A stretch of DNA of 64,000 nt from Oopsacas minuta (lineage: Eukaryota > Animalia > Porifera), in NCBI GenBank assembly GCA_024704765.1, contig JAKMXF010000006.1, positions 62,001-126,000 of the forward strand. The letters run 5' to 3'. A program made the translations under genes and the position numbers. Below the pieces are notes generated by a model, which was not told the origin of the DNA, made no database searches, and worked only from the letters and a program-made list of their open reading frames with translations. Below, piece after piece: positions 6,527 through 48,900 of the stretch. Each line of letters starts with the position of its first letter. The first letter of the stretch is position 1.

Positions 6527-6990
6527 TCTATACTATTAAATCTCAATTGTTGTCTGTTTGTTTGTCCGTTGTCAAGGAAAGAATTTACGTTATACAATTT
6601 TGAAATTATCACATAACTATGTATTTATCGTATTTATCAAGGAAGTAAAGAGAATTCGATAAAACTTTACCAAATATATCGAACATGATGAATCCGATTT
6701 TCATACTTTTGGATTATCTTATATAAATTTATTGTTGTTTTTATCAATTAAAGTAAACAAATTGTCCAAATCTCAAATTACACACACATGCTTGCTCTAA
6801 ACGTCTACAAAAGGGGTTGATCTTACAAAATAATTAAATAATATATATGCCATCTACGTATATTTGTGAATTACATTGTTCTAAATATATCTATATCATA
6901 ATACACAATGGGGCCGTCAATTTGGAGAATAATGGATACCTCGAGGCGCAATGCCCCGAGTTCATCGCGAAGCGAAGAGCCAAAAGCTCG
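6527..6990 (+). mobile_element. Helitron-like non-autonomous element, family A, full copy (464 bp)
   Basis: A|TC start, (TGTT)n near the 5' end, 3' GC-rich hairpin ending CTCG|T, no TSD. Homologous to 27621-28082. Confidence 0.65.
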
Positions 6991-7136
6991 TTCAGTTACA
7001 ATTGATTAGAAATTACAAACAAAAATCTCTCTTTGACCTTCAATGATGGTATTACTCCAAAACAACTCGCAGCATATCCTAAACACATATCTTTCAACCC
7101 TCAGTATTTCCGACTGTTTGCCTTTGGACAGTTCAG

Positions 7137-7819
7137 CAGAGATGGAACCGGTCAGCTTTTTCATGACCCGACCCGACCAGCCGGTCGACCGGTCGACTGG
7201 TAACTTTGACTATACACTGCCTGGCCAAGAGTATTGGAACACCCTGCCACTTGTGACACAAGTGGCACACGGCGAGAATATGTTGAATATTCTATGGATA
7301 TAGCAGAAAGTAGAAAATCTGTTTTGCTCAAGGTTGATGAATTAATATTTATTCAAAAATGTATTAAATAATTCTCAATAATTTGTCTATAACTAATGTG
7401 GCATTTATATTGGTGCCATGTGCTAATTGTGGCCCTGGCGTTCGAATACTTTTGGCCAGGCAGTATATAATAGATGATTATACACATAAATCCTATTAAA
7501 TACAGAAATGTAGAAAAGATAGAAATATTGAAATGTAAACTAATAAAGAAATTTTGAATATATAGAATATGTAAGGAATTTTACGGCTAAAGTCCGTTTA
7601 ACGCTGCCTCCTTTAGCACAACTAGACTTTCAACGGTAGATCCGGCCAAATTACTCCTCTTAGAGTCCAGGGTAGCACCACCAATACTCAAATGGCGTTC
7701 GCTTATTTTGGTAAATTTGATTACGATATCAAATTCAGATTTACCATATTCAGAAATTATGACCGGCCGGTCGAAATCTTCGACCGGTACCCGACTCGAC
7801 CCGACCAGTTCCATCTCTG
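7137..7819. mobile_element. hAT-type MITE
   Basis: 17-bp TIR CAGAGATGGAAC(C/T)GGTC; perfect 8-bp TSD CAGTTCAG at 7129-7136 and 7820-7827; subterminal GACCG/CCGAC repeats. Confidence 0.85.
7215..7465. mobile_element. Tc1-like MITE nested in the hAT MITE
   Basis: TIR CACTGCCTGGCCAA..AGTATT and its inverse; TA flanks; second copy at 22631-22863. Confidence 0.75.
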
Positions 7820-8398
7820 CAGTTCAGTAATGAAGCAATCTACAAATAATGTGAGAATATCTTTCGCTATCAAAATTATTCTCATTGTTGGCTGAAATGA
7901 AGACGATCTGGTCAAATGAAACCTCTTTACATCACCATGATTCCTGGATTTTGCTGCAATACACAGGAGCAAACTTTAGGCTTTTTTCATTTTATGAATT
8001 AACTCTGCGAATATCAGTAATAGGTAAGCGATTCAGGATTACTGAAATTCGTTTGCTACCAAGTACCAACTGTAAACTATCTCCCAAATCCAGTGGCGAG
8101 GCTAGGACCACACGAAGTTGCCGTAATGCCGCATCTGTAATATATTTTTATGTAAATTTTGGTGGGCACAATAAAATTTGTTAGGGAATGTGCCGCATGT
8201 GCCGTATCTACCATTCATTCAGATTCCACCATAATTTCCTTTTCCTTTAGATTCCACTAGTTTCTACCATTCAGTCAACTTCCTATATATTTCCTTAATA
8301 TATGGGCTGTGTTCTGCAATCTTGGTCTAGTATGTTCGTAGTCTTAAAGTTTGTACAGGTCATTTGAGGCAAATATTGAAATGGTACAATGTTCCAAT

Positions 8399-8563
8399 CA
8401 GTGTTTCCCCCAAAGCGCGTTAAGCGGGTCAATTAACGCGCTTAGAGTATCTAGCAGCGTTAAAATAAAGACTCCATGCATTGGGCTTAGTATGCGTATA
8501 TGTGACAGAGGCCCCACATAATGATATCATTAGCGCTTTCCCAATCTTCAGTGGGAAACACTG
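8399..8563. mobile_element. hAT-type MITE (165 bp)
   Basis: TIR CAGTGTTTCCC / GGGAAACACTG; TSD GTTCCAAT / GTTCCAAC. Confidence 0.8.
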
Positions 8564-8863
8564 GTTCCAACACACCCCATGTCATCCCTATGCCTTACAT
8601 AGTCATAACGAAACAGAAATATATACTGATTAAACAGTCAAACTCAACATTGTACCCCTATTTAGATATCAGTATAATCAATAACATCGCTACAAAGTGA
8701 ATATTCTACAAATTCAATAGCATATTTAGACTTCAGAGTAATGTCTTGCTTATTGAGCTATATATTTGAGCCTAAATTGGTTTGAGCTCATAAACTTATC
8801 TAGTGCTTGAGAAATACAAATTCAGCGGTGAATAATAAATCCATCTGTTTAAATTCACAGTAA

Positions 8864-9940
8864 TTACTGGCAATTCCAGTTTCCAATTCCGTATAAAGCG
8901 TTTACCAGCGTTCCCATCATAACAGTATCGGATGGTGCTTGGAAGTCAAACACCATCAAACCCTCATAGCCATTATCTTTTATCCATTGGACATCTTTCT
9001 CTGGGTTGGGAGAAATTTGCCCAAACCAAAACCCAAGTGACAACCTGTCTTTACCCATACCCTTATCAACATATTGAGGAAGTCTGAATATAGGATTTCC
9101 ACCGTAAGTCATTTCCCAACCATAATCTAACGTATCAGAAAGTTTTTTTCCTTTATAAATGGTGTCAAAATTATGTATATCATTAAACAGAGCTTTTGAG
9201 ATAATTTTATCTGGCATTAACTGCTGCATTATTGACGTTACCATAACAAGAGATGTCTGGTTTGGAATTCCAATGCTATATTCATCATCAATATCGATAC
9301 CATCCAATCCATATTTATCTACTATGTCTGTCTTTAAATAGTTAACAAAAGCCGTCGCTACAATTTCTGATGTAAATTGAGACCAACCTACTGCTGAATG
9401 ACCATTCAGAATAGTCAGCAATACTGTAATGCCCTTATCCTGTAGAGCCTTAACAACCCCGCTATCAAGAACTTCCTGAATATTTGGATTAAACTGATTT
9501 AACGTGGGTGGATTGTTATTGTTTGCCCTTAGAGAAGGCAGTTCATTTGTACAATAATTACCTCCAAAGATACAAACCACATCAACAGCCGGGCTTCCAT
9601 CGGCAAGAGTATAAGAAGCAATATTTAGAAATTGTTGAGAATCATCTGGAGTAGTATACGCGACTGTCATATGATTCTTATTGTAGGCATCACATTGAGG
9701 TGCGACACCATACCAAGGTATTCCACTGAAAAACACGGCATCACCTGGGTTAAACATCCTCAGTTGTCCTTGGTTGTTAATTACTATATATTGACGACAG
9801 AGAAAAAAGAAAGTGATGTTAGGGTTCTTGATGGCAATTCGTTTTGCTTTCACTGGTGTACAATTCCGAACTGTCTTGATGAGATTATCCCAATTAGCTC
9901 CTCCGTACATTGCAACATTAGTTGATTTTATCCAACCCAT
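8864..9940 (-). CDS. GH18 endo-beta-N-acetylglucosaminidase (Endo H-like) with an extra ~88-aa N-terminal module; intronless
   Basis: 358-aa open frame. VKALQDKGITVLLTILNGH and KYGLDGIDIDDEY match the Endo H pattern (VRPLQQQGIKVLLSVLGNH ... KYGLDGVDFDDEY), with the DxDxE catalytic motif intact. No signal peptide. Confidence 0.9.
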   Translation of the reverse strand: MGWIKSTNVAMYGGANWDNLIKTVRNCTPVKAKRIAIKNPNITFFFLCRQYIVINNQGQLRMFNPGDAVFFSGIPWYGVAPQCDAYNKNHMTVAYTTPDDSQQFLNIASYTLADGSPAVDVVCIFGGNYCTNELPSLRANNNNPPTLNQFNPNIQEVLDSGVVKALQDKGITVLLTILNGHSAVGWSQFTSEIVATAFVNYLKTDIVDKYGLDGIDIDDEYSIGIPNQTSLVMVTSIMQQLMPDKIISKALFNDIHNFDTIYKGKKLSDTLDYGWEMTYGGNPIFRLPQYVDKGMGKDRLSLGFWFGQISPNPEKDVQWIKDNGYEGLMVFDFQAPSDTVMMGTLVNALYGIGNWNCQ

Positions 9941-9950
9941 AGTATACCCA

Positions 9951-9957
9951 CTCCTTT
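9951..9957 (-). promoter_or_regulatory. Shine-Dalgarno-like motif upstream of the GH18 ATG
   Basis: Minus strand reads TAAAGGAGTGGGTATACT-ATG; AAAGGAG ends 10 nt before the start codon. Confidence 0.55.
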
Positions 9958-11218
9958 AATTATGTGTTGTTACCACCTGAGTTACCTAACCATATGTAAA
10001 AGGAAAAAATAATATTGCATTGAATACAGTGCATTAATTTACAACCGTCTCTTCAACATAATGTTATTATCACATATTGCACTTCTTACCAATACCTAGC
10101 AGTTATTTGCTGTATAAGGCTGTTTGTTTATACGTATGTTTTTTTTCTTAGAATAAACTCCTGGTGTAACAAACCTGGTGTCGTTATAGTGGTGAATGTT
10201 ATATTCAGAGAGTATATGCCTCTCTGGAGCTCTGTCAAGGACCAGACCAGTATTGGGAACGATTGCGAGTGTATGTATTAAATATGTAAGGTTTGCCGCA
10301 ACTATAGTTTTTTAATGAAGGAATCACTTTAATAACTCAATAGAGAGTTATTCTACATTGATTTTATTTTTATAGCATATTAGAGATAACTTGTGATACA
10401 TTAGCATCAATCAACCGTTTTTGTGGGAAACCTCCAATTATGTATTTTATTACATTTACAGAGACTATTAGACTATGTAAATGATGTTAAAAATGTGGAG
10501 TTGTATCTAAAATACTTTATGAAATTGTGACAGATCATGAAATCTAATTGAAACCCCGTGTTATAAGGGGACAGTCAACGAAAGAATGCTTGTTTTATTG
10601 ATCACGTTATTCATTATATCATGATTTATCGTCAGTTAATCTTAGTACTCTGGCTCTATATTGCATAATTTCTGGCCCCATTTACATCAAAGGGGAATTT
10701 CTCCTATTTATGTCAGACTTTGTCATCTTATATACTTGCAAGTTGCAATTATCTTTATTTTTTGTATTTGCTATACCAATTGCATTATTAACAGATATAC
10801 AGCTTCTAGATTACGTATTCAATATATTCACTTAAGTAAGTCGGTGATGAAAGATGCGAATGTGGTGATGAAACGTTCATTCTCCTGGACAACTCGCCAT
10901 ATCTCCAAATCATGACAACTAATCTAGAATTCAAAGAGACAATAAGTCACCAAACCATGAGGTCACCATACCGTATGATATTAAGTTTTTAACAATGAAA
11001 TGTTTGTGTTAAGTTATCTTGATGCATTCATGTATTTAATGTCTCAGGAGAGAAGTGACGTTCCTTAACTTTCCATACGAGCATTGTTCTTCTGTTTGGA
11101 TGCACACAATAACTTTATCATTTGAACCAAATGTCGAACAAAATCGAAGTATTTTCTCTAGAAGGATCCTCCTATATAATAAGATAAGAGTAAACGTGAA
11201 ACTGGAATCAGTTACAAA

Positions 11219-11901
11219 TAGGGGTTACAATCCCGGGATTTCTGGATTGAAATTTACCTAATCCCGGGATTTTTCGGGATTGTATCTTACGTACCAAATT
11301 TTGTGAATGTCAATTTGGGAAGTTTAGAGAAGAAAAATATGTCTGATGGCTCGACTTGAGATGAACATGTAATCCTTTGGTTGGCCCACCATCACATCAC
11401 ACTTTAATACTTTTTACATAATTTGCATTGCGCAAATTTGCCACATAAAGATCAAAGAAAATGTTTCAAGATTTCAGCACCAACAAAATCTTGAAAAATA
11501 GGTGATGTAGTTTCTGCCATAATAATTTAAGAGAGAATGCGAGTATCTAACATTTGATTATTGGAGAAAACCTATTTATAGATTAATGACACTAGTACTT
11601 GTAATCATCGTATTTTCTTGTTGTTATTTAGGACTGAATATTGGAATACATACAATTCGTGTCATGATTATTGATTTAAATAAGACTATGTATTTGTAAG
11701 TTACCATCGTAAATAGAATATTGATTCCAGGTAGTGTTATTATACAATAGATAAATTATTAGGAAATTGCTATTGTTAAACATAGAGTAAGATAGAGATA
11801 ACACAAAAATTTCGGTATCCCGGGATTGCAAGACTGGATTCGGGATTTGAGAAACAATCCCGGAATGAACACACATCGGGATCCCGGGATTGTAACCCCT
11901 A
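11219..11901. mobile_element. hAT-type MITE (683 bp)
   Basis: 21-bp perfect TIR TAGGGGTTACAATCCCGGGAT; subterminal CCCGGGAT repeats; degenerate flanking duplication (TTACAAA). Confidence 0.75.
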
Positions 11902-11914
11902 GACTTACAAACCT

Positions 11915-12153
11915 CAAGCAGTGCTTTATATTCATAAAAACGATAAATTTACATATGATTAATCCAAAAGTGTGAAAATCGGATTCAGCATGTTCGATAT
12001 ATTTAGTAAAGTTTATTGAATTCTTTACTTCCTTGATAAACACGATAAATACATAGTTATCAACATTTTCATAATTGCATACCGTAGATCCTTTCCTTGA
12101 CAACGGACAAACAAACAAACAAACAAACAGACAACAATTGAGATTTAAGCATA
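11915..12153 (-). mobile_element. Helitron-like family A, partial 5' half
   Basis: Reverse-complement match to 6530-6760, including the (TGTT)n tract. Confidence 0.6.
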
Positions 12154-12448
12154 AGCTATTTGTAAGCCGTATTATGGGCATTCAGATAATCAAATTAGTC
12201 TACATTTGTGTATGGCAAGCAAATTAACCAAATCTTAAAATATAGGTACAGCCTTGCTCTAAACGGCTACCCAGTGGTAAGTAAGTACGCTGAATCCGAA
12301 TTTCGCATTTTAAGTTTCTCATCTGTAAATCTATTGTTGTTTTTATGAATATAAAGTAAACAAATTTCAAAATTGTTATAGAATCATACTTTCAATGACT
12401 GTACTGGTATACTCGAGTATGCTGAGTCTGAATATTGTAAACAACATT

Positions 12449-12551
12449 AATATTATTAAATCTCAGTTGTTGTTTGTCTGTTTATTTGTCCGTTGATTAC
12501 CTTGAGGCGCAATGCGCCGAGTTCATCGCGAAGCAACGAGCCAAAGGCTCG
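12449..12551 (+). mobile_element. Helitron-like family A, internally deleted mini-copy
   Basis: 5' motif TTAAATCTCAGTTGTTG joined directly to the 3' motif GAGGCGCAATGCGCCGAG...GGCTCG|T. Confidence 0.6.
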
Positions 12552-13021
12552 TTACCATTAAAATTGATAATTGTAAAATCATTTCACAAATTCTGATAAA
12601 CATGGACTCACATCCCCAATGACCACCCTTGCTCTTTAGGCATTAGGCTACTGAATCTAGTTAATATACCGTATACATATAGCCTGGAAAGTGTAAAAGT
12701 GTGTCAATATATATATTTAAGATAAATATACAATTGAATCTACAAAATTTTGTTGAGAATAATTGGGTAATTGTTTTGCATTCATTTTCAGTTATTAATC
12801 TTTATATGGATGCCGGTTATATGAACACCTGATATAACAATAAGCCGGATATGAGCAGCATCTTATCGAAAACAGTTATCATATAATCTTGTATATTTTA
12901 TGCTGGTTATAAGCCTATGTAAAGCTACCGCCAGGTTTATATTTAACCTGTAGTGCACAATGTTATGCTGTTTCTACAGTTAGAATCTTATGCAATCTAC
13001 GTAGAAAAATTTGATAAGTTA

Positions 13022-14164
13022 ATGGCTACTAACACTATCGATTGTCATCACAAAGTGGTGATTGACAATGGTTCTGAAAGGATGAAGGTAGGCTTCCATG
13101 GGGCAGATACACCCTCTTACATATTCCCGACTCTTCTTGGCCGAATCCGATATTTATTTCTTCTTCAAATGAATTATAAGGAAACTTATGTTGGAACAGA
13201 AGCACAAGCAAAACGTGGTATCCTTGCTCTACAGTATCCGGTAGAATATGGTATAATCACAAACTGGGATGCTATGGAGAAAATATGGCATCACACATTC
13301 ACTAATGAATTACGTGTAGCATCAGAGGAATGCACAGTTCTATTGACAGAACCACCTCTTAACCTTGGAGCTAACAGAGAGAAAACTATTCAGATAATGT
13401 TTGAAACATTCGGTATCAATTCTCTCTATTTGTGCAACAGTTCTATACTATCTCTGTATGCTTCTAGTCGTACTACTGGAATTGTGATAGAATCAGGAGC
13501 AGGGGTGTCACACATTGTACCTATCTTCAAGCAACGTACACTTACTAACGGTATACCACGTCAAGATGGTGTTGCTGGCAAAGATCTGACTGAAATCTTG
13601 ATGAAAATGATGTGTGAACGTGGCTACTCATTCACCACAACAGCCGAAAGAATGATTGTTAACGAAATGAAGGAACAGTTATGTTATGTAGCTTTAGACT
13701 ATAAGCAAGAGATGATAAGATCACAATCAGATTCCAGTCTGGAGAAGAATTATGAATTACCAGATGGTGGCATGTTGAATGTTGGTAGTGAGAGATTTCG
13801 TTGTCCGGAAGCTCTTTTCGATCCTTCTCTGATAGGAGTGAGTACACACCGTTTGCAAGATCTAGTGTATAACTCCATTATGAAGTGTGACAATGAGATA
13901 CATAAGTATCTCGCTAGCAATATTGTATTATCTGGAGGTAACACAATGTTTCCTGGTTTCTCAGAGCGTATTGAGAAGGAAGTAATCAAGCTACTTAGTC
14001 CGGATATGAGAGTTAAAGTTATTTCTCCTTCAAATAGAGAGTACAGTGCATGGATAGGAGGATCTGTTCTAGCTTCTATGAATGATTTCAATAACGTTTG
14101 CTTATCTAAAGCTGAGTATGATGAATATGGACCTTGTATTGCGTATAGAAAATATGTACATTGA
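13022..14164 (+). CDS. Divergent actin / actin-related protein, intronless, 380 aa
   Basis: Colinear with actin (DNGS, YPVEYGIITNWDAMEKIWHHTF, ELPDG, ERFRCPEALF, NIVLSGGNTMFPG, WIGGSVLAS). Likely start is the ATG at 13022, not the GTG at 12953. Confidence 0.9.
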   Translation: MATNTIDCHHKVVIDNGSERMKVGFHGADTPSYIFPTLLGRIRYLFLLQMNYKETYVGTEAQAKRGILALQYPVEYGIITNWDAMEKIWHHTFTNELRVASEECTVLLTEPPLNLGANREKTIQIMFETFGINSLYLCNSSILSLYASSRTTGIVIESGAGVSHIVPIFKQRTLTNGIPRQDGVAGKDLTEILMKMMCERGYSFTTTAERMIVNEMKEQLCYVALDYKQEMIRSQSDSSLEKNYELPDGGMLNVGSERFRCPEALFDPSLIGVSTHRLQDLVYNSIMKCDNEIHKYLASNIVLSGGNTMFPGFSERIEKEVIKLLSPDMRVKVISPSNREYSAWIGGSVLASMNDFNNVCLSKAEYDEYGPCIAYRKYVH

Positions 14165-16534
14165 AATATGATTGAATGATATTTATTATATAAATTGCCA
14201 TTCTAATGAATAAATGTATATTTTAGTTATAAAGGAGTTTTCTTTAGGTAATTGAATTTATTACACAAATGAAAACAGCCATACAGATATGATTCCATGT
14301 ACAGATGATTTATTGATATGATGGATTCTTATAAGAAATGTTTTTAATGTAATTATTGTATGTCACTAAATTATTTCATTCGCATCAACAGACAGGGCCC
14401 GGGATAGAAACATTCACACAACCAGAAGCATGCAATAAGGATTTTGTGCATGCTTCTGGTAGTACGAATGTAGAAAATTGAGCTTCTTCATTGTTGGACC
14501 TGTTTACCATTATTGATAATTCAGATATTCATTTCCAGATGTTTCGAGTGTATTTGCCTCATAGACTACCATAATGAAGGAATGTGGACTGCCAGCTCGG
14601 GTCCTGGAACTTGGTCCATTGTATTCTCTTGATATCTCCTAATCCGCTAAAGTTAGACTACGAAAATGTATTATTGTTCGATAGGATCTCATATGTTGGG
14701 TGTCGATTGATCATATTGCCTTACCTAAAATGTTTGTGGAATGTGAGTTATGTGGTTTTCACACCTTCCCATATTATGTTGGTAAGATAAAAATATCGCT
14801 TCCAATGTGAGTTAGACATAAGAAATCTGTTATTATACAATAGAGGTCCATAGGTAATGACTCCTTTTTAGATTTTCTTACCTGATAGCCAACTATACAT
14901 AAGAACACATTGTAAATTGTGACTTTTGGACTAGAGATGTTGTTTTCGGCCGAGGGATTTATTCCGTGGTCTGTATTGCAGAAACGGTGCATTTTTGTCC
15001 GATTAAATGTATGGCACTTTTGTGGAACAACAAATTATCAACCATAAAATATTTCAGGAATTTGCCAAATTATTTGAGAGCTTGTAATAACCCGTGTAAC
15101 GTAACCTAAAATATTGCATCTTTCATTTACTAATTGTTGTATGGAATGTTTTGTATAAATCTTTATGCATTATAAAAATTGTCTTCATAAAGTTGGCTCG
15201 TTCTTGAGTTTTCGTAGGGGCATTGGATGACACAATTTTGTGAATATCTAATTATAATTCAATAATCGTGAATTTATTGTTAACTTGATTCTCCCATCAG
15301 TGACTCAACACGTGTAAACAATATTAGTGCGCTTCCCGTGTATGATGTAAGCTAGCCCAGAATATAGTATTATAGATTAATGTTATTTATTGAGGGTAAT
15401 TATAGCATCTGGCCCTTTGGACACAATTAGCCAGTGAATAGTTGACATCAAAGGTCATTAAAATCGTTTTCCACTTTATGATGCTACGAGGAAGCATTGA
15501 GAGCCAGAGAATTATACTTATGAGAGATGTAGAAATTTACAAACTCCACAGGTACAGAGATTAGAATTAGTGCATGCTTGCAACCGAATAGTTCAATATT
15601 TGGTTCCCGAATATTCGTACTGTCAACATCCGGTTACTCGAATGGCGGTTAACTCGAACACATACAATTCCAATCATTGTACTTTTAATTATTATCGCAT
15701 TCGTTAACTTGAACATACGCTATCTCGAACAGATTTTCAGGGTTCAAGTTCCCGGGATATTAACTGTTTAGATATTAGTTAAGAATATTTTGAATACTTT
15801 TGATATGAAAGATTTGTATTGCATTTTTTGATTTTTCTAGATTGATAGCATACGTTAGCGTCTAACAAATTTGATTTATCCAAGGCAAAACGAGGAAATG
15901 TCTACGCGGCAAAGTAAAGGTCAGTCAAAATATCTGCCATTCCATCAAAATAGATTATGTGTGTACATGTTGTAATTACCAATCAGTCTAAGTTGAGTAG
16001 ATTTGATGCAAACCTTAGATTTGAATTACTTTAATTCTTAGGCGAGACTATAAAAGAAAGATGAATTTATCATAGCTGAGTATTACATTGGATAATATTG
16101 AAAGAAAATCACAGAAAAACGACCAATTCATCTGCAATTAAATAAATACTGGGTAATTATAGTTATTAATCACATTTTTATGCTCAATTAATAATTATAT
16201 ATTTCTGGCAACCAAGCCGTGAGAATTGGCATTACAGTAGCATCAAATTGTACAGTGAAGAACATAGATTTCACTTTTGACAATTGGAAAAGCGTGGGAC
16301 TCACGTCTAAGGCATCAAGATTGGCACCTCTGCACTATACATAAGTGGTCTCGCTCCCAGGGTCGGGACGTTTTATCTGTAGTTGATATAGCATTCCTTA
16401 TTAAAATGACGCCGGTATCTACCTTCTGTAATTCTTGAAATTGGCAACCTCGTTTTTCAAATCCTGGGACCACCCCGCTATATATTTTTATAGAGTGTAG
16501 AATTTATCTATTTATCACATTTAGGATCACAAAA

Positions 16535-19500
16535 ATGAAGTCAATTTGTTGCTTATAATATGCTGTCTCATAATCATTTCTACACAGTTAGAGGGTGATA
16601 GTGTTACAGTGGATCTACCATTCGGATCTATTAAGGGATATTCTAACGGAGATTCCTGACAGTTTTACGGAATACCATTTGCAGCTCCTCCAGTAGGAGA
16701 TCTACGTTGGCAGCCTCCTACTGACTTCACCCCTTGGGCTGGATCTACACTAGGTGCTAATATCCCACCACCTGCTTGTATTCAAAATTGTGAAGGTGCA
16801 ATATTTGGTTGTATGACCAATAGTGAAGATTGTCTCTATTTGAATATTTTCATACCTCTCCCCTGGACACCTGGTTCAAACATAACGTATGATGTATTAC
16901 TGTTCATATATGGGGGCTCATTCATACAAGGGTCATCTGATAGTTTGATCTACGATTCCAAGTAAGAGTAATGAATAATTATCATATGAGTACTTAACTG
17001 GGTTTGAGTACGCTTGGTTTGATAAGCATACTAGATTACAGCAGATATATAGTAAGTCATGAACTAAATGCTTCGGGAATCATTTTATACAAGGATGCTC
17101 AATTGTTCTTATACGCGGGCCTTACTGTATATCTACTATAATATATTTTGCTTCTCAATTCCACGACAATCTCTAGAGACATTGGGGGAGATTGCTAATT
17201 TACGATGTTGGGGGATCAAATGAACATTTTCCACCGTTTTCATAGATCAGCCATTAGTAGTTATCCAATGGGATGCGGAAAAAGTTTGAAAGTCGAAGTA
17301 AGAATTAGTCCGAAAAATAAAGTACGGATAAGATCGAAAACGTATGAAGTGGGAATAAGATCAAAAGGATTGTAAGGCTTAGAATATTTCAACTATCGCT
17401 CGGAAACTCAGCTTGCATTGGTGTACATCTTGGCCCTACCCTGAGTCAGCAGAGAATTGTTCTATCTTCTAACAGAGCAGCCATACAATATCCAATGTAG
17501 TGTTCCTATTACAGCCTTTAGAGAGAGTATGGAGATAGAGATTCCTATAGCTGCTTGTGTGCTAGTGGCATGCAAACACGTGTCAGATGGATAAATGACG
17601 AAAAAGAAAGAAGTTCCTAAAGAATGGCTCTGTCCCACCTGTGATGTTCGGATCTTTTTCAGCCCTCCAAGTGAATTAGATTCTTTGGTATCGCTAGGAG
17701 CGTGCTGATTGGCATTTATCGGATGGATTGATTGCATTGCATTTCTAAGAGACTATTGCATTTAAGTTCACGATTGCGATTGCCACTCCGAGTTTCAGCT
17801 CGCTTGATCGCAGGTCTACTTCGTACTTCGAAAATATTTCGAGTCTCATTCCTTTTTGAGAGATATTTCGAACTTAGTTCTACTTAAAATTATTCCGACG
17901 ACTAGTTATTCAACATTAGTGATTACATACTCAACTTCGAATGGTATGCAATATTTCGAACGCTTCTTTTGCACTTGGCACTATGCTGCTGGGATCTGTG
18001 AGGGTATACGTATTATGGCCTTAATTACATATCATATTTTACTTCTAAATAGGTTCTTCTCAAACTTCACTAATACCATCATAATAACGTTCAATTATCG
18101 CCTTGGAGTACTAGGTTTCCTAAGGAATCCGTTATATGGTATAGATGGGAATATGGGATTTATAGATCAACGTATGGCTATGCTATGGGTTAACGCCTAT
18201 ATTTCATATTTCGGAGGGAATGGGAAGATTACCCTGTTTGGGGAAAGTGCTGGAGCTATCTCTGTCGGAGCACACTTAGCATCCCCTCTATCCACGGGAC
18301 TATTTGATAACGCTATCATTGAGAGCGACCCCTGGACTGCCCCATTAAGAAATACAGTTGATGCAGACGTATTGGGAGAGGACTTCTTTTTGGTAAGTAG
18401 TTATATAAATATTACCGCACTTCATGAAGCACTGCATAATGAACATTTCGCAAAACCGGATCGACACTCTGATTTCTACCCAAAGTACAAACTTGGAAAT
18501 TTGCAAATGGTTTGGTTGCTTCTGTGAAACAATGTTGGCAATAATAACTTAGAAATAAAATAAAATTTGTCCCAATTTAACAAAATTTTGGCTATCAATC
18601 TAGCTTAATAAAATTTGCTCAGATCAATAGGGATTTCCAATTTCGATTTACGAATCTTTACCACTAGGTTAGTGGAGGTTGTCCATTTTTCTCCACAACT
18701 AGTGTCTCAATTAAGTGGAGTTAACTAAATGTTCCATTTAGCAAATCTCGCTAAAGTGATTTGTTTACCTAATCAACCTTAGTCTTATTGTAAAATAGTC
18801 TAGCCATAGCGCACAAGTGCAGATTATTCCACCATTTATATTTCTATCTTAATGAATCCAAGTACAACTGATTAAAGTGTAATTTCATAACTATATGCAC
18901 GTGTTCCGAATTGAGCACTAAATATACAGTCGTCTCCGTACAGATTTTTCATGGATTACCCTCTTTAAGCTTAAGTCATTCTAGTATGCTTAACAACAAT
19001 GTGTGTGTTGGGTTAAGATTTTTGTTGTTTTGGCTGTATTTTCTAGCATTCATTGTAGCTTGACTTTCTTTTACTGCTGCAGGGGCCTTTTCTGGGCTAA
19101 CCCAGCTAATATTCATGGTTGTATACTCTGGTTTATCCGAACATATTACAGGACAGGGGATAGTCTGGGATTTTCCCAGGCCTAATCTATGTTAGCCTGG
19201 GTATTAATTAAGCTAGTCAATAATATTTCCCCTAGCACTGTAAAAGATACTCCTGGCAGCCTGAGTCAACATTAGGGCTAGAAATAGGCCTGACTCAACG
19301 AAAATGAGTACATATTTCCCAATTATTGTCATGATAATTCGATGAAATATAGATATGGAGGCCCCGGACCAAATGCATACTTACCAATCCTTTCTAACAA
19401 AATCCTTAGATATTTATCTCGAAATCCCTGGATTTTCAAAATTTTACTTGCAGATAATATGATTTTTTCACTATTTTATCAGAAAATTGAGAGAAATATC

Positions 19501-45900: not shown

Positions 45901-48900
45901 AAAATATACAGATGCTGAAAACAGCAGTGGCATTTTGTTATTACAGTCTGTTATTATAGCACCTTCATATGGTTGTGATGCTATAACAAATGGTGGCACT
46001 TGTTTCAGTTACTTTACTACAAGTAGTGGAGTTAGCTGGGAAAATGCTAGACAACGATGTAACTCATGGGGTTATGATCTAGCTACAGTGACAAGTTCAC
46101 AAGAGAATTCTCTACTGTATAATACAAGATCTAGCTCAAGCTCAGCTGATTGTTGGATTGGACTTCATGATTTACACAGTGAAGGATCATATGTTTGGTC
46201 TGGTGGTAGCTATAGTTCGTATAGAAATTGGAATGATGGTGAACCTAATAATTTATACGATGAAGATTGTGTGCACTTCTTTGATAGTATATATTGGAAT
46301 GATCTCCTCTGTACTCTCACACTTAACTGTTACTTTTGTAGTGCTAATGGTAAGAACACAATATAGATAGTTACGTAACTTAGCGGTTATGTCTGTAATG
46401 CCAATTCCGAATATAATATTTTCAACAACAATGCGATACTTTGTTGGTTTTCTTGTGTGAATGGAATAAGTACTCAAATTTCTGATTTCCTAGGCAAAGG
46501 TGGGCACAGTAAATTTAACTCAGATGTTCGTTAATATGGAAGTGATAGTTAAAGCGTTAACGTTAACATATATTATATAAATGTAGCGGGGTTCAAATAG
46601 GACTTAACTGAAATAGACGATTGTTAGTTAGTAATAATAATATCCGAGGTTACCTAGTACAAGATTTGTAATATATCTAACTACCAATATCATTGTGGGA
46701 ATCCGATGAATCTACAATTACAGGTATAATCAAAGAGTTACTATAAATACTAATTAATGTGATACTGTCATCAGGGCCCAGCAGAGTAGCGATATTACAA
46801 GATTATTATCTATAGACTAAATCACTGTAAGCTACTAAGTTGAATCCGCTATACAAACAACAAAAATGCTGTCTTTTTTTGCTCTAAAACACCTATAAAA
46901 TGAGGATTTGTTGGTTATTTTAGATATGTCTGCTCGCACAACTTTGATATGGAATATTTATTATTTACTGAATAATACGGGATAAGAGATTGTTAAAAGG
47001 AAAGCAAACTTGAATTAACATATTGAAATAAGTCTGATATTAAATTGAAACTGAAAGTTTTAATGAAAATTCGAATCCGGTAATTAACGGATGAACGGTT
47101 TAGTGTCCAGCTTTTGATCCTATGTATTTTAAAGGTGGAGGCACGTTTGTGGACACGATGTGTAAGCAACCGTTGTAGTGTTAGCAAATTGCACTTTTGC
47201 ACTGTGTATATAATATGAGATGTATAGTATTATTTAAATGATTGTTCTTGTGTGTTTTAGTGAACCAATTTGGGCGAATCCAATATTCAAGAAACTACCT
47301 ACCATTACTTGACGATACAGTTCTAACATCAGACACTACTCTATTCTGTATTACAGAGAATAAGTACACTCCACAAGTTGTATGGAGTTATCAGGATCTA
47401 GCTAAGAGTACTACATCTACTCTCACAAGTTATACATCTAGTACTACAGGTGTTAGTTCTCTACGAGTATACATCAGTAGACCAGGATACTATTCTTGTA
47501 GAGTTAAGGTGAATGGAGGGAGTTATAAAACTTATACTGCTCTTATAGCTGATGATCTATCCACAGGTATTTCGAATATTCATAATCTTTTAAGAATCTT
47601 GTGCATATATGTCTTTCAAAATGAAGCTGAGTCGTTTCAATGACCAGCAGGTTCAAGGGTGGCACCAGATCCACTGAGAGGGGGAGCGGGACAAATTCGA
47701 GGGGCCCTTTAAGAACTTGTAATAGGCTGACTAGCAAACCTAAATGGAATTCACAAACTTTCATAGTCTATTGCCACAATTAGTGTAAAATTGTGTATCA
47801 TGACCACACTTGAGCCTGCATTAGGGCTAAGTTTGGTCATGGTTATTGGTTAAGTTTGCTCAAAGTGGTGACAGAATATCAACTTGTGCATAGATTGCTG
47901 TAATATCTCTCTGTCACCAAATTATGGGTAAGTTTGATGATAAGACATCAAGTTGAGAAACCCTCTTATTATATAATATATCGAGATGTATTTGACTTGG
48001 TTAATCTATATGTTTTGACGGTTGTATCAACAAAATTGCAAAGATGTCAACTCTCACTGCAAATTCGTGAGTCCGACAGATTTTAATGGCTCTAAATCTA
48101 AAGGGTATAATTCCTATAATCTATGCTAGCCTAGATTATATTCGGGTTAAACTGGGTCTGGAGGTAATTCTAGGCTGTTACACCGACACTTTTTGGAATG
48201 GTAACTAATGATCCTATACAAATTTAGCCTCACGTCCGACATATATGTCGTTCAAGGCTTCTGGATTACCACTATTACGTGCACGTCCAGATCTCAGAGG
48301 CTCCACTGTATGAGATATTGCATCATATACTCTCCTATTGACATGCAGTAAAAAAAGAAATTGAGATTCGTGGTCAAGTAGAAGACTTCAGTCGCTACAA
48401 ATTCGGTCGTCCCAGTTCCCAAATTTTAACTCAGCTGCCTTGAGTGGCACGTACCGACAAAAAATGGCCCTGGTTGAGCATATCATGTTTTTGTTTTGTA
48501 TTTGCATCAATCAATTGTTATAAAGCAACACTTACACATGCACATGCATATACATATATTTTCTACTAGCTGATGGTACTCTTCGTCTGTACGATGGATC
48601 CACAGAAAATGAAGGTATACTAGAAATCTTTCACGATAATCGCTGGGGTTCTATTTGTGATCACAGTTGGGACTCAAGAGATAGCAAAGTTGCTTGTAAA
48701 CAGATGGGTTTTCCAGGATATAATACGTATTATACTTCATGGAGAATAACAAACATCTACTGGCTGGATCATATTAGATGTAGTGGAAATGAAGCATCTA
48801 TAGCTGATTGTTCTCATTATGGATGGAGAGATGGTCATTGTTCAAGTAATGAAGGTGTTTATCTTAAATGCTATCCTGCAGGTATGTTCAGACAAATAGA

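What the first reader, a model, noticed from the sequence alone, without database searches (positions are those of the whole stretch)
8864..9940. Bacterial-type Endo H-like glycosidase embedded in an animal genome: candidate horizontal transfer
Seen: an intact, intronless 358-aa ORF among host MITEs and animal genes, with KYGLDGIDIDDEY and the preceding strands matching Streptomyces Endo H-type GH18 enzymes. Known: animals usually release N-glycans with cytosolic GH85 ENGase, and Endo H/F-type GH18 ENGases are mainly bacterial and fungal. Inferred: an acquired, still-functional enzyme for high-mannose N-glycans. With no signal peptide it may be cytosolic, acting on free glycans or ingested microbes. 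The frame is intact while many neighbours are decayed, which suggests selection.
Basis: partly seen in the sequence, partly recalled or inferred. Interest (0 to 1): 0.85.

Follow-up and report, generated by a model that had tools for sequence, protein, structure and literature searches.

The report
Bacterial sugar-trimming enzyme gene in glass sponges
The glass sponge Oopsacas minuta carries an intact gene of bacterial origin for an enzyme that probably clips sugar trees off proteins; other glass sponges share, multiply and express it, so it is an old, kept gene transfer and not contamination.

Summary
Window 8864-9940 (-) is an intact, intronless 358-aa ORF with an invariant LDGIDIDDE catalytic block. 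Its nearest solved relatives are Endo H, Endo F1 and BT1285.

The horizontal-transfer reading is supported.
- The window is Oopsacas minuta contig JAKMXF010000006.1 (126.8 kb). The gene lies between an actin gene and other host genes.
- Its GC3 (0.32) matches the host, against 0.54-0.74 in the bacterial relatives.
- Intact copies, often in tandem or inverted arrays, sit on long host contigs of other glass sponges.
- All nine sponge sequences form one clade (100/99) nested deep inside bacteria. The AU test rejects the alternative (p = 7e-10).
- A relic of the bacterial ribosome-binding site survives upstream.
- An Aphrocallistes beatrix metatranscriptome contig is a GT-AG-spliced mRNA of one copy, with a 3.3-kb 5'-UTR intron.
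- Between species dN/dS is 0.26-0.42.

New points:
- Residues 1-88 are a PAN/Apple-like binding module with no Pfam match, shared with the bacterial subfamily.
- The protein is leaderless in both bacteria and sponges.
- It is not an Endo H orthologue: it scores 124 bits against the 300-bit cutoff.

Enzyme activity, cellular location and expression in O. minuta itself remain untested. The scan noted this same stretch twice (s1-277115). I found no paper reporting it.

The parts
8864..9940 (-). Complete CDS (358 codons plus stop) of the PAN-like + GH18 endoglycosidase gene. It is a single coding exon.
   Evidence: ORF list. It aligns full length with bacterial and sponge homologues from the same Met. 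NCBI's gene call on this contig is the same ORF started at M11.
9677..9940 (-). Residues 1-88: an N-terminal PAN/Apple-like beta-sheet plus one-helix module, probably for ligand or carbohydrate binding.
   Evidence: AF2 models have pLDDT 96 (whole protein) and 88 (domain alone). Foldseek matches are the HGF N-domain, factor XI apple domain, the SML-2 galactose-binding PAN domain and AFDB 'Apple domain' proteins, TM 0.62-0.71. There is no Pfam match. The module occurs in 221 representative clusters, fused to other secreted hydrolases.
8867..9676 (-). Residues 89-358: a GH18 (beta/alpha)8 barrel of the Endo H / Endo F1 type.
9281..9307 (-). Catalytic block L212-E220 (LDGIDIDDE). D218/E220 correspond to Endo H D130/E132.
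   Evidence: The alignment to Endo H. The block is invariant in all 15 aligned sponge and bacterial sequences.
9941..9956 (-). Relic of the bacterial ribosome-binding site: AAGGAG at 9951-9956, 10 nt before the ATG.
   Evidence: Acidobacteriota-type relatives have AAGGAGTTTCCTATG. Sponge copies keep GAGGAGTTTACTATG (L005), AAGGATTTTACCATG (L001) and AAGGAG..TATACTATG (O. minuta).
9985..10012 (-). Putative 3' splice acceptor of a 5'-UTR intron: a pyrimidine tract followed by TTAG|GTAACTCA, about 45-49 nt upstream of the ATG.
   Evidence: It is homologous to the acceptor ...CTACAG|AGTTAGCTGAGTCA, which the spliced A. beatrix mRNA L092 is proven to use. Read depth drops, and one unitig ends (9987), at this place. 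Its use in O. minuta is not demonstrated.
8795..8814 (-). Short 3'-flank element conserved between the O. minuta and A. beatrix copies (TTTCTCAAGC[A/G]CTAG..).
   Evidence: Its function is unknown.
6530..6992 (.). A copy of the genome's high-copy repeat (MITE-like), inverted relative to the copy at 11924-12553. The two copies bracket the gene.
   Evidence: Inverted arms 6536-6716 against 11960-12148 are 89-97% complementary. Depth is about 2,000-2,900 times the flank depth.
11924..12553 (.). The second copy or copies of the same high-copy repeat, between the GH18 gene and the actin gene.
   Evidence: The same family lies 0.5 kb from the L005 copy in another sponge.

Best explanation
This is a bacterial gene that entered the genome of an ancestor of hexasterophoran glass sponges as DNA, ribosome-binding site included, and became a eukaryotic gene. 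The coding sequence stayed intronless and keeps the bacterial start codon. Upstream it gained a host promoter and a 5'-UTR intron. Its base composition drifted to that of the host, and it was duplicated into tandem and inverted arrays in some species. The product is a two-module, leaderless protein. A PAN/Apple-like binding module (residues 1-88) is followed by a GH18 barrel of the Endo H / Endo F1 type with an intact D-x-D-x-D-D-E centre. It most likely cuts the GlcNAc-beta1,4-GlcNAc core of high-mannose or hybrid N-glycans by substrate-assisted catalysis, with the PAN-like module holding the glycan or glycoprotein target. Shown here: bacterial origin, host integration, single acquisition, selection, fold, and splicing and expression in A. 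beatrix. Inferred: enzyme activity and specificity, an intracellular site, and the physiological role. That role could be cytosolic deglycosylation as in filamentous fungi, or processing of glycoproteins from engulfed microbes.
For: Identity and context:
- The window is O. minuta contig JAKMXF010000006.1, 126,794 bp, with Actin, a multi-exon COesterase gene and a PAX-like gene called around the gene.
- Unitigs from four runs bridge both ORF ends into the flanks.
- GC3 is 0.32-0.38 in sponge copies, close to the host flank GC of 0.36, against 0.54 and 0.74 in the nearest bacterial genes.

Relatives:
- The best hits (65-69% identity) lie on gene-sparse 48 kb to 1.19 Mb contigs with C-lectin, NHL, Tc1/pogo, RRM and Tim44 genes.
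- The RRM neighbour is 77% identical over its full length to O. minuta SRSF3-like.
- The next-closest hits sit in dense bacterial neighbourhoods.
- All named relatives are bacterial.

Phylogeny:
- In the IQ-TREE LG+C20 tree the nine sponge rows are one clade (100/99).
- That clade lies inside nested bacterial clades supported at 100/99, 99/93 and 100/99, rooted on signal-peptide forms.
- The AU test rejects bacterial monophyly (dlnL 99, p = 7e-10).

Other evidence:
- An RBS relic is retained upstream.
- Selection: omega is 0.26-0.42 between species at dS 0.5-0.84, and all eight full copies are intact.
- Expression: Logan contig L092 comes from SRR29297749, an A. beatrix metatranscriptome (PMC11525543). 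It joins a 103-nt exon to the gene across a 3,287-nt GT..AG intron.
- Fold: pLDDT 96. Endo H, Endo F1, BT1285 and EndoBT-3987 are the top matches, well ahead of chitinases.
- The catalytic block is invariant.
- Precedent for a leaderless GH18 ENGase working in a eukaryotic cytosol: bioRxiv 10.64898/2026.03.25.714127.
Against: - No enzymatic data exist for any member of this PAN+GH18 subfamily.
- It fails the NCBIfam Endo H equivalog cutoff (124 against 300 bits) and Pfam GH18 gathering (25.3 against 29.6), so specificity cannot be carried over from Endo H.
- Expression is shown in A. beatrix, not in O. minuta. The O. minuta runs were of unknown kind and gave ambiguous depth.
- Omega of 0.3-0.4, and 0.5-0.84 among tandem copies, is relaxed compared with bacteria at 0.03-0.09.
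- Copies in the species closest to O. minuta carry frameshifts.
- A leaderless protein with a PAN-type module, a fold that is usually extracellular, is odd, and its cellular location is unknown.
- The donor phylum is unresolved: the sponge clade sits in a polytomy in the careful tree.
Confidence: 0.82

Rival explanations
1. The gene is integrated and of bacterial origin, but in O. minuta it is no longer functional, or is on its way to decay. On this reading the intact frame is a leftover and not evidence of present use.
For: Copies in the nearest relative carry frameshifts at codon ~76 (L088-L091) and codon ~265 (L086, L089, L090). An O. minuta variant unitig at high depth has a 1-nt deletion in the same A-run at 9143. 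Omega is relaxed. No O. minuta transcript was shown.
Against: The window copy is intact over 358 codons while dS to other species is 0.6-0.84 and omega is 0.26-0.41, well below 1. The catalytic block and all family-invariant residues are kept. The splice-acceptor region is conserved. The A. beatrix orthologue family is transcribed and spliced.
Confidence: 0.1
2. The protein is a GH18 enzyme or lectin with another specificity, such as chitin or chito-oligosaccharides, or another beta-GlcNAc glycan including peptidoglycan. It could also be a non-catalytic binder. On this reading it is not an N-glycan endoglycosidase.
For: It scores below the curated Endo H and Endo F3 equivalog cutoffs. Pfam places it only marginally in PF23916 and below the GH18 gathering score. 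No member has been characterised. The PAN-like module is fused elsewhere to beta-1,3-glucanase, phospholipase C and a metalloprotease, so it marks targeting and not a glycan class.
Against: All top structural and sequence neighbours are N-glycan ENGases, namely Endo H, F1, BT1285 and BT-3987, with TM up to 0.84 and 30% identity. Chitinases trail by more than 10 orders of magnitude in E-value. The full DxDxDDE centre argues against a pure lectin. The compact barrel of about 270 aa lacks the chitinase insertion domain.
Confidence: 0.15
3. The ORF comes from contamination or a chimeric assembly: a bacterial fragment wrongly joined to sponge DNA.
For: Sponge samples are metagenomes. The O. minuta assembly was binned from a holobiont by best-hit taxonomy. 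The runs laid here are from the project that produced the assembly, so they are not independent.
Against: Composition matches the host. Independent unitig assemblies cross both junctions. Homologous copies lie on long host contigs in at least three other assemblies made by other groups and methods, next to sponge genes. There is a GT-AG-spliced mRNA. In-frame stops and non-bacterial flanks start within 5-100 bp of the ORF.
Confidence: 0.02
4. The family is anciently eukaryotic or originated in sponges, and bacteria acquired it from sponges. That is the reverse direction of transfer.
For: Bacterial holders are patchy across phyla, so the gene moves easily between bacteria.
Against: The sponge clade is nested several supported nodes inside a bacterial radiation that spans more than 8 phyla and includes soil and freshwater taxa. 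The AU test rejects sponges lying outside. The PAN-like module and the GH18 core have a wide bacterial distribution in many architectures. The sponge genes retain a Shine-Dalgarno relic, which has no use in a eukaryote. No other eukaryote appears among the named hits.
Confidence: 0.02

Closest known systems
Endo-beta-N-acetylglucosaminidase H (Streptomyces plicatus; PDB 1EDT, 6VE1), GH18
   Same: It shares the (beta/alpha)8 barrel (TM 0.82-0.84 on Endo H, about 30% identity) and the same catalytic block with the D130/E132 equivalents. The barrel is compact and lacks the chitinase insertion.
   Different: Endo H is secreted through a signal peptide and has a single domain. The sponge protein is leaderless and has an extra 88-aa PAN-like N-domain. 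It scores 124 bits against the 300-bit equivalog cutoff, so it belongs to a different subfamily and its specificity is untested.
The uncharacterised bacterial leaderless 'PAN-like + GH18' subfamily (annotated EndoS/ChiA family endoglycosidase or GH18 protein; for example Pyrinomonadaceae and Blastocatellia MAGs, Mucilaginibacter sp. X4EP1, Fodinibius saliphilus, Flavobacterium spp.)
   Same: The architecture is identical from the same start Met to the C-terminus, at 50-63% identity. It also lacks a signal peptide and has the same invariant residues. This is the family the sponge gene belongs to.
   Different: The bacterial genes are GC-richer, have a functional SD box (in Acidobacteriota), are single-copy in unrelated neighbourhoods, and evolve under much stronger constraint, with omega 0.03-0.09. 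The sponge genes have a spliced 5' UTR and occur in arrays.
Cytosolic GH18 ENGases of filamentous fungi (N. crassa gh18-10, Trichoderma Eng18B)
   Same: These are leaderless GH18 ENGases working inside a eukaryotic cell, where they deglycosylate ERAD substrates. They fall in the same high-mannose loop group as Endo H, F1 and BT-3987 (PMC8374693).
   Different: Fungal Endo T (4AC1) is only a distant structural match (E = 5e-9, 13% identity). The fungal enzymes have no PAN-like module. This is an analogy of cellular setting, not shared descent.
Animal cytosolic ENGase (GH85) and lysosomal di-N-acetylchitobiase (GH18 CTBS)
   Same: These are the usual animal enzymes that cut the chitobiose core of N-glycans (general knowledge; GH18 against GH85 mechanisms in PMC8374693).
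   Different: They belong to different families or subfamilies, and no sequence relationship was detected here. I could not test whether glass sponges still have them.
PAN/Apple domains (HGF N-domain, factor XI apple, apicomplexan microneme PAN lectins, oomycete CBEL)
   Same: The same beta-sheet plus one-helix fold (TM 0.62-0.71). Several of these bind carbohydrates or proteins.
   Different: There is no sequence-level match to Pfam PAN families. Only one Cys pair is present (C48/C83), and it is missing in many members of the wider module family.

Membership tests
Glycoside hydrolase family 18 | DxxDxDxE catalytic motif at the end of strand beta4 | tested here: met
   L212-DGIDIDDE-220 aligns to Endo H LDGVDFDDE. 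It is invariant in 15 sponge and bacterial sequences.
Glycoside hydrolase family 18 | (beta/alpha)8 TIM-barrel fold | tested here: met
   The AF2 model has pLDDT 96.1 and pTM 0.93. Foldseek returned 500 PDB matches at E <= 0.001 (its counting limit); all 50 listed are GH18 or GH18-like structures.
Glycoside hydrolase family 18 | Pfam PF00704 gathering score | tested here: not met
   25.3 bits against a cutoff of 29.6. The sister model PF23916 (EndoS TIM barrel) passes narrowly, 27.8 against 27. This is a matter of model sensitivity, because fold and motif are met.
Endo H (NCBIfam NF045482 equivalog) | Whole-protein score at or above the curated equivalog cutoff | tested here: not met
   123.9 bits against 300. 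It is a relative of Endo H, not an orthologue.
Endo-beta-N-acetylglucosaminidase (EC 3.2.1.96), high-mannose type | Hydrolysis of the chitobiose core of high-mannose or hybrid N-glycans | not testable with these tools
   This is inferred only from the nearest neighbours Endo H, Endo F1, BT1285 and EndoBT-3987 and their grouping in PMC8374693.
PAN/Apple domain superfamily | Five-stranded sheet packed on one helix | tested here: met
   The domain model has pLDDT 88. TM is 0.62-0.71 to HGF-N, factor XI apple, SML-2 and AFDB Apple proteins. Foldseek E-values are weak (0.01-0.1).
PAN/Apple domain superfamily | Sequence match to Pfam PAN models and the conserved disulfide pattern | tested here: not met
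   There is no Pfam hit at E <= 10. The single Cys pair is absent from many homologues.
Bacterium-to-animal horizontal gene transfer | The recipient clade is nested within the donor-domain phylogeny with support | tested here: met
   (AU p = 7e-10).
Bacterium-to-animal horizontal gene transfer | Physical linkage to bona fide host genes, and host-like composition | tested here: met
   and for the orthologous loci.
Bacterium-to-animal horizontal gene transfer | Presence in several related host species (vertical inheritance after transfer) | tested here: met
   The holders are O. minuta (Lyssacinosida), A. beatrix-type contigs (Sceptrulophora), and at least two further hexactinellid-like assemblies.
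Bacterium-to-animal horizontal gene transfer | Eukaryotic-type expression (spliced or polyadenylated mRNA) | tested here: met
   This is met for A. beatrix, with a GT-AG-spliced metatranscriptome contig. It is inconclusive for O. minuta.
Bacterium-to-animal horizontal gene transfer | Absence from other animals | tested here: inconclusive
   No non-sponge eukaryote appears among the 120 listed hits or the nearest Atlas clusters. Most hits are unnamed, and demosponge, calcarean and amphidiscophoran genomes were not searched directly.

The most novel reading that the evidence does not exclude
Glass sponges may have turned this bacterial 'PAN-lectin + ENGase' into an amplified, fast-evolving, leaderless effector aimed at microbes and not at their own glycoproteins. 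In particular it could strip chitobiose-core N-glycans from the S-layer glycoproteins of the ammonia-oxidising archaea that dominate both the O. minuta and A. beatrix holobionts, or from engulfed eukaryotic prey. That would serve symbiont control or harvesting inside the syncytium. Three observations are compatible with this reading but do not demonstrate it: the gene arrays, the raised omega among paralogues, and the fusion of the same PAN-like module in bacteria to phospholipase C, a reprolysin protease and a beta-1,3-glucanase.
Probability: 0.1. Interest if true: 0.8.

Novelty: new member of a known kind. Interest (0 to 1): 0.6.

Why it matters
Well-supported bacterium-to-animal transfers that are old, shared by several species, expressed and amplified are few. 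I found none described for glass sponges: neither hexactinellid genome paper mentions HGT or this enzyme, and no searched paper links ENGases with sponge HGT.

This case is unusually clean, because several independent lines agree:
- the bacterial start codon is kept;
- a ribosome-binding-site relic survives;
- a 5'-UTR intron was added later;
- the base composition has shifted to that of the host;
- the gene occurs in arrays.

It therefore gives a worked example of how a prokaryotic gene becomes an animal gene.

It also points to an uncharacterised, widespread bacterial enzyme subfamily and to a new PAN-like binding module (221 representative clusters, no Pfam model). Both could be of practical interest, because Endo H-type enzymes are standard glyco-engineering tools.

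Biologically, it raises a testable question. Do glass sponges use a GH18 enzyme for cytosolic deglycosylation, as filamentous fungi do, or for dealing with microbes?

Tried and rejected
- **Contamination or chimera:** rejected (see rivals).
- **Other copies in the window:** tblastn found only one.
- **Bacterial promoter and terminator relics:** the scan around the gene gave counts equal to shuffled sequence. Rfam found nothing in 5-14.5 kb.
- **Bacterial gene neighbourhoods as a clue to function:** the neighbours are unrelated (two-component system, P450, SDR, GlnRS, PS decarboxylase, VWA) and there is no polysaccharide-utilisation locus, so there is no clue.
- **Read depth as evidence of expression in O. 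minuta:**
  - The four runs are of unknown kind and come from different adults.
  - The repeat-to-flank depth ratio is constant, as expected for DNA.
  - The ORF-to-flank ratio varies from 2 to 22 times, with variant contigs 1-2% different.
- **Synteny between the window and the other sponge loci:** none beyond the gene. Homology stops 5-100 bp from the ORF ends, apart from shared repeat and lectin-exon similarity.
- **Poly(A) signals:** no AATAAA or ATTAAA within 500 nt downstream in any copy. This is uninformative.
- **Naming the species behind SRR11455650, SAMN144229xx and ERZ25069837/ERZ25071281:** the accessions appear in no searchable paper.
- **Loss of GH85 ENGase or NGLY1 in glass sponges:** not testable, because no tool gave me a query sequence and the genome paper does not mention them.
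Full report
**1. The observation**

Window 8864-9940 (minus strand) holds an uninterrupted 358-codon ORF. The similarity to Endo H-type GH18 enzymes is real.
- phmmer against all PDB chains gives Streptomyces Endo H at E = 4e-28 over residues 87-282.
- NCBIfam Endoglyc_H matches residues 91-351 at E = 6e-36.
- The scores are below curated cutoffs: 124 against 300 bits for NCBIfam, and 25.3 against 29.6 for Pfam GH18. PF23916 passes narrowly at 27.8 against 27.

So this is a relative of Endo H, not an orthologue.

**2. Whose genome and what context**

The identical protein, called from M11, is annotated on NCBI contig JAKMXF010000006.1 of assembly GCA_024704765.1, which is 126,794 bp long. The prefix JAKMXF is the Oopsacas minuta (Hexactinellida) genome project.

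Called neighbours are an actin gene (window about 12965-14164), a multi-exon carboxylesterase gene, and a PAX/HTH-like fragment. The gene lies between two inverted copies of a repeat whose depth is about 2,000-2,900 times that of unique flank.

Logan unitigs of four runs from the O. minuta project cross both ORF ends. Examples are 9869-11577 with no differences, and 7790-8981. These runs are not independent of the assembly, but they were assembled by a different method.

**3. Relatives**

A search of 5.8 billion proteins found full-length homologues (97-100% coverage) at 47-69% identity. The groups below are defined by the first, quick tree.

| Group | Members | Context |
|---|---|---|
| Closest six | P0002, P0003, P0007, P0011, P0013, P0021 | The four looked up lie on gene-sparse, transposon-rich contigs of 48 kb to 1.19 Mb with C-type lectin, NHL, RRM, Tim44, Tc1/pogo and integrase genes. 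P0013 shares P0007's 1.19-Mb contig. P0021 is on a 1.2-kb Logan contig with no neighbours |
| Next-closest | P0014, P0005 | Dense bacterial neighbourhoods with a TonB receptor, BACON, an IS1595 transposase and GH25 |

Copies are often clustered. There are four intact copies within 16 kb of L002. At least six or seven lie on that 1.19-Mb contig, with more on 858-kb and 72-kb contigs.

The RRM gene next to the L005 copy is 77% identical over its whole length to O. minuta 'SRSF3-like'. Other animals match only its RRM. L001 lectin exons and an L005 repeat match window sequences at about 70% DNA identity. These contigs therefore come from other glass sponges.

Every named relative is bacterial:

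| Relative | Identity |
|---|---|
| Pyrinomonadaceae | 63% |
| Blastocatellia | 62% |
| Acidobacteriaceae | 59% |
| Mucilaginibacter | 59% |
| Owenweeksia | 58% |
| Planctomycetaceae, Flavobacterium, Proteobacteria and others | lower |

The nearest ESM Atlas clusters are 92-100% Bacteria.

**4. Phylogeny and direction of transfer**

The tree has 77 rows and was built with IQ-TREE under LG+C20+F+G4. It was rooted on the more distant, signal-peptide-bearing Endo H-like proteins (Puia, Zooshikella and others).
- The nine sponge sequences form one clade (100/99).
- That clade lies inside a 45-row bacterial clade (100/99), inside a 52-row clade (99/93), inside a 64-row clade (100/99).
- Forcing all ingroup bacteria into one clade with the sponges outside costs 99 log-likelihood units (AU p = 7e-10).

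The immediate sister is unresolved in the careful tree. The quick tree and the upstream relic both point to an Acidobacteriota-like group.

**5. Marks of domestication**

(a) Composition. Sponge copies have GC3 of 0.32-0.38, close to the flank GC of 0.36. The nearest bacterial genes have GC3 of 0.54 and 0.74.

(b) Start codon. Bacterial and sponge proteins start at the same Met (M-[GASP]-W-x-K...).

(c) Ribosome-binding-site relic. Acidobacteriota-type relatives carry AAGGAGTTTCCTATG directly upstream. Sponge copies keep GAGGAGTTTACTATG (L005), AAGGATTTTACCATG (L001) and AAGGAG..TATACTATG (O. minuta). Bacteroidota relatives have no such box. This agrees with the separate first-stage note s1-221536.

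(d) A spliced mRNA. Logan contig L092 (1,289 nt) comes from SRR29297749, one of the Aphrocallistes beatrix metatranscriptomes (PMC11525543).
- It matches L002 copy d at 99.7% over the gene body.
- Its first 103 nt match a segment 3.3 kb upstream at 100%.
- The genome shows GTGAGT after that exon, and ...TTTTCTATATCTACAG before the second exon, 58 nt upstream of the ATG.

So the gene is transcribed from a host promoter and has a 5'-UTR intron.

The acceptor region is the conserved upstream element of all sponge copies. In O. minuta a pyrimidine tract plus TTAG|GTAACTCA lies 45-49 nt before the ATG (about window 9985-10012). Read depth falls there and one unitig ends at 9987.

(e) No added signal peptide. 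In every copy an in-frame stop lies 2-16 codons upstream of the ATG, inside exon 2, so the upstream exon cannot add a signal peptide.

A. beatrix is in Sceptrulophora and O. minuta is in Lyssacinosida. A single acquisition therefore predates the split of these two orders.

**6. Selection**

| Comparison | dN/dS (NG86) | Notes |
|---|---|---|
| O. minuta against other species | 0.26-0.41 | dS 0.6-0.84 |
| Between other sponge species | 0.37-0.42 | |
| A. beatrix-type tandem paralogues | 0.50-0.84 | |
| Bacterial pair (L003 against L004) | 0.03 | one sponge-bacterium pair gave 0.09; the rest were saturated |

Both modules are constrained: 0.26-0.57 for the PAN part and 0.22-0.43 for the GH18 part. 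All eight full-length copies examined are intact.

In the species closest to O. minuta (about 81% DNA identity) the picture differs. Copies carry a frameshift at codon ~76 in four independent assemblies, and some carry another at codon ~265 in an A-run. So the family is kept overall but individual copies decay.

**7. The protein**

AlphaFold with 67 homologues gives pLDDT 96.1 and pTM 0.93.

*GH18 barrel.* Residues 89-358 form a compact (beta/alpha)8 barrel. The best solved matches are Endo H (TM 0.82-0.84), Endo F1, BT1285 and EndoBT-3987, ahead of all chitinases. These enzymes form the high-mannose-type loop group of GH18 ENGases (PMC8374693). The block LDGIDIDDE is invariant.

*N-terminal module.* Residues 1-88 fold separately as a sheet plus one helix. 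Modelled alone (pLDDT 88), the module matches PAN/Apple domains at TM 0.62-0.71: the HGF N-domain, factor XI apple, a galactose-binding microneme PAN domain, and AFDB 'Apple domain' proteins. It has no Pfam match.

An exhaustive search with this module found 221 representative clusters. They include:
- proteins made of two or three tandem repeats of the module;
- many small proteins of 130-155 aa with clear signal peptides;
- fusions to zinc phospholipase C + PLAT, a reprolysin metalloprotease, a GH64 beta-1,3-glucanase, Laminin_G_3 + NAGPA, and T9SS-sorted surface proteins.

It is therefore a portable binding module attached to outward-acting hydrolases. Its one Cys pair (C48/C83) is not conserved across that wider family, so a reducing compartment is not excluded.

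The PAN+GH18 subfamily is leaderless in bacteria too. The more distant Endo H-like proteins have classical signal peptides.

**8. Most likely working**

Shown:
- a bacterial gene integrated in glass sponge genomes;
- inherited across orders;
- expressed as a spliced mRNA in A. beatrix;
- encoding a folded two-module GH18 protein with an intact active centre.

Inferred:
- It cleaves the chitobiose core of high-mannose or hybrid N-glycans by the GH18 substrate-assisted mechanism, with the PAN-like module supplying target binding (about 0.65).
- It acts inside the cell, because no signal peptide can be added (about 0.5). Unconventional export cannot be excluded.

For the physiological role I see two candidates.
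- Cytosolic deglycosylation of misfolded glycoproteins or free glycans, as done by the leaderless GH18 ENGase of filamentous fungi.
- Processing of glycoproteins from engulfed microbes or symbionts.

The arrays, the raised omega among paralogues and the module's company in bacteria lean towards the second. Nothing here tests either.

**9. Unexplained**

In the four O. minuta runs the unique flanks have depths of 84, 48, 43 and 25, and the repeat-to-flank ratio is constant. The ORF, however, has 4.8, 2.1, 2.8 and about 22 times the flank depth. The contigs responsible differ by 1-2% from the window. One carries a divergent stretch at codons 252-266 and a 1-nt deletion in the A-run at 9143.

Each library came from a different adult, and the project includes RNA-seq. 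Unassembled near-identical paralogues with copy-number variation, or transcripts, would both fit.

**10. Novelty and verdict**

Neither glass-sponge genome paper mentions HGT, GH18 or chitinase. A recent sponge decontamination preprint does not mention Oopsacas. No paper in the library links ENGases to sponge HGT.

The kind of event, a bacterial glycoside hydrolase acquired by an animal, is known. This instance and the PAN+GH18 subfamily appear undescribed.

There are three corrections:
- the donor family is not Endo H proper;
- the transfer is ancient and shared among glass sponges;
- the protein has an additional binding module.

Interest is moderate to high (0.6).

Noticed in passing
window 6530-6992 and 11924-12553; L005:4754-4970: Two inverted copies of the genome's very high-copy repeat bracket a 5.2-kb segment holding the GH18 gene. 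A copy of the same repeat family lies 0.5 kb from the gene in another glass sponge. This might have helped the gene to move or duplicate as a composite element. It could also be chance, given that the repeat's depth is about 2,000-2,900 times that of unique flank.
   Followed up: partly
window 8950-9990 (reads): ORF-specific excess depth (2-22 times the unique flanks) differs between libraries made from different adults. The variant unitigs are 1-2% divergent. One has a divergent stretch at codons 252-266 and a 1-nt deletion in the A7 run at 9143. This means either unassembled paralogues with copy-number variation, or transcripts.
   Followed up: partly
L086:1021; L089, L090 (codon ~265); L088-L091 (codon ~76): In the species closest to O. 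minuta the gene carries frameshifts in different combinations on different contigs. One is in the same homopolymer A-run that varies in O. minuta. L088 also holds a second, inverted copy at 14804-15250.
   Followed up: partly
L002:20004-20106 (exon 1 of the A. beatrix mRNA L092): The 103-nt 5' exon contains a short upstream ORF, ATG AGT TGG ATC CAG AAT TAA (MSWIQN*). Its first three residues equal the start of the main protein (MSWTK). It may be a remnant of a decayed upstream gene copy whose promoter is now used.
   Followed up: no
P0190-P0337: The PAN-like N-domain is a widespread module with no Pfam model, present in 221 representative clusters. It occurs as small secreted single-domain proteins, as 2-3 tandem repeats, and fused to phospholipase C, a reprolysin protease, GH64 glucanase, NAGPA and T9SS cargo.
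   Followed up: partly
L005:3096-4265 (P0003; also P0123): This copy has lost the family's usual stop and runs on for about 35 extra residues (389-390 aa). A sister member, P0122, is truncated to 307 aa.
   Followed up: no
window 10239-10369 and 8187: There is a 129-bp presence/absence polymorphism upstream of the gene. It is not an intron: on the gene strand the ends are not GT..AG. There is also a 9-bp insertion polymorphism (ATGTGCCGC) downstream, seen in three of the four runs.
   Followed up: no
window 45957-47523 vs L001:224-1594: C-type lectin exons of the window's large mosaic gene match lectin genes next to the GH18 copy of another glass sponge at 69-72% DNA identity. This is a conserved hexactinellid lectin family.
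   Followed up: no
L006:4711-5628, 15634-16863; L088:8387-8881: NHL-repeat genes flank the GH18 copies in two other glass sponge assemblies. The scan had noted a large NHL propeller family in O. minuta elsewhere.
   Followed up: no
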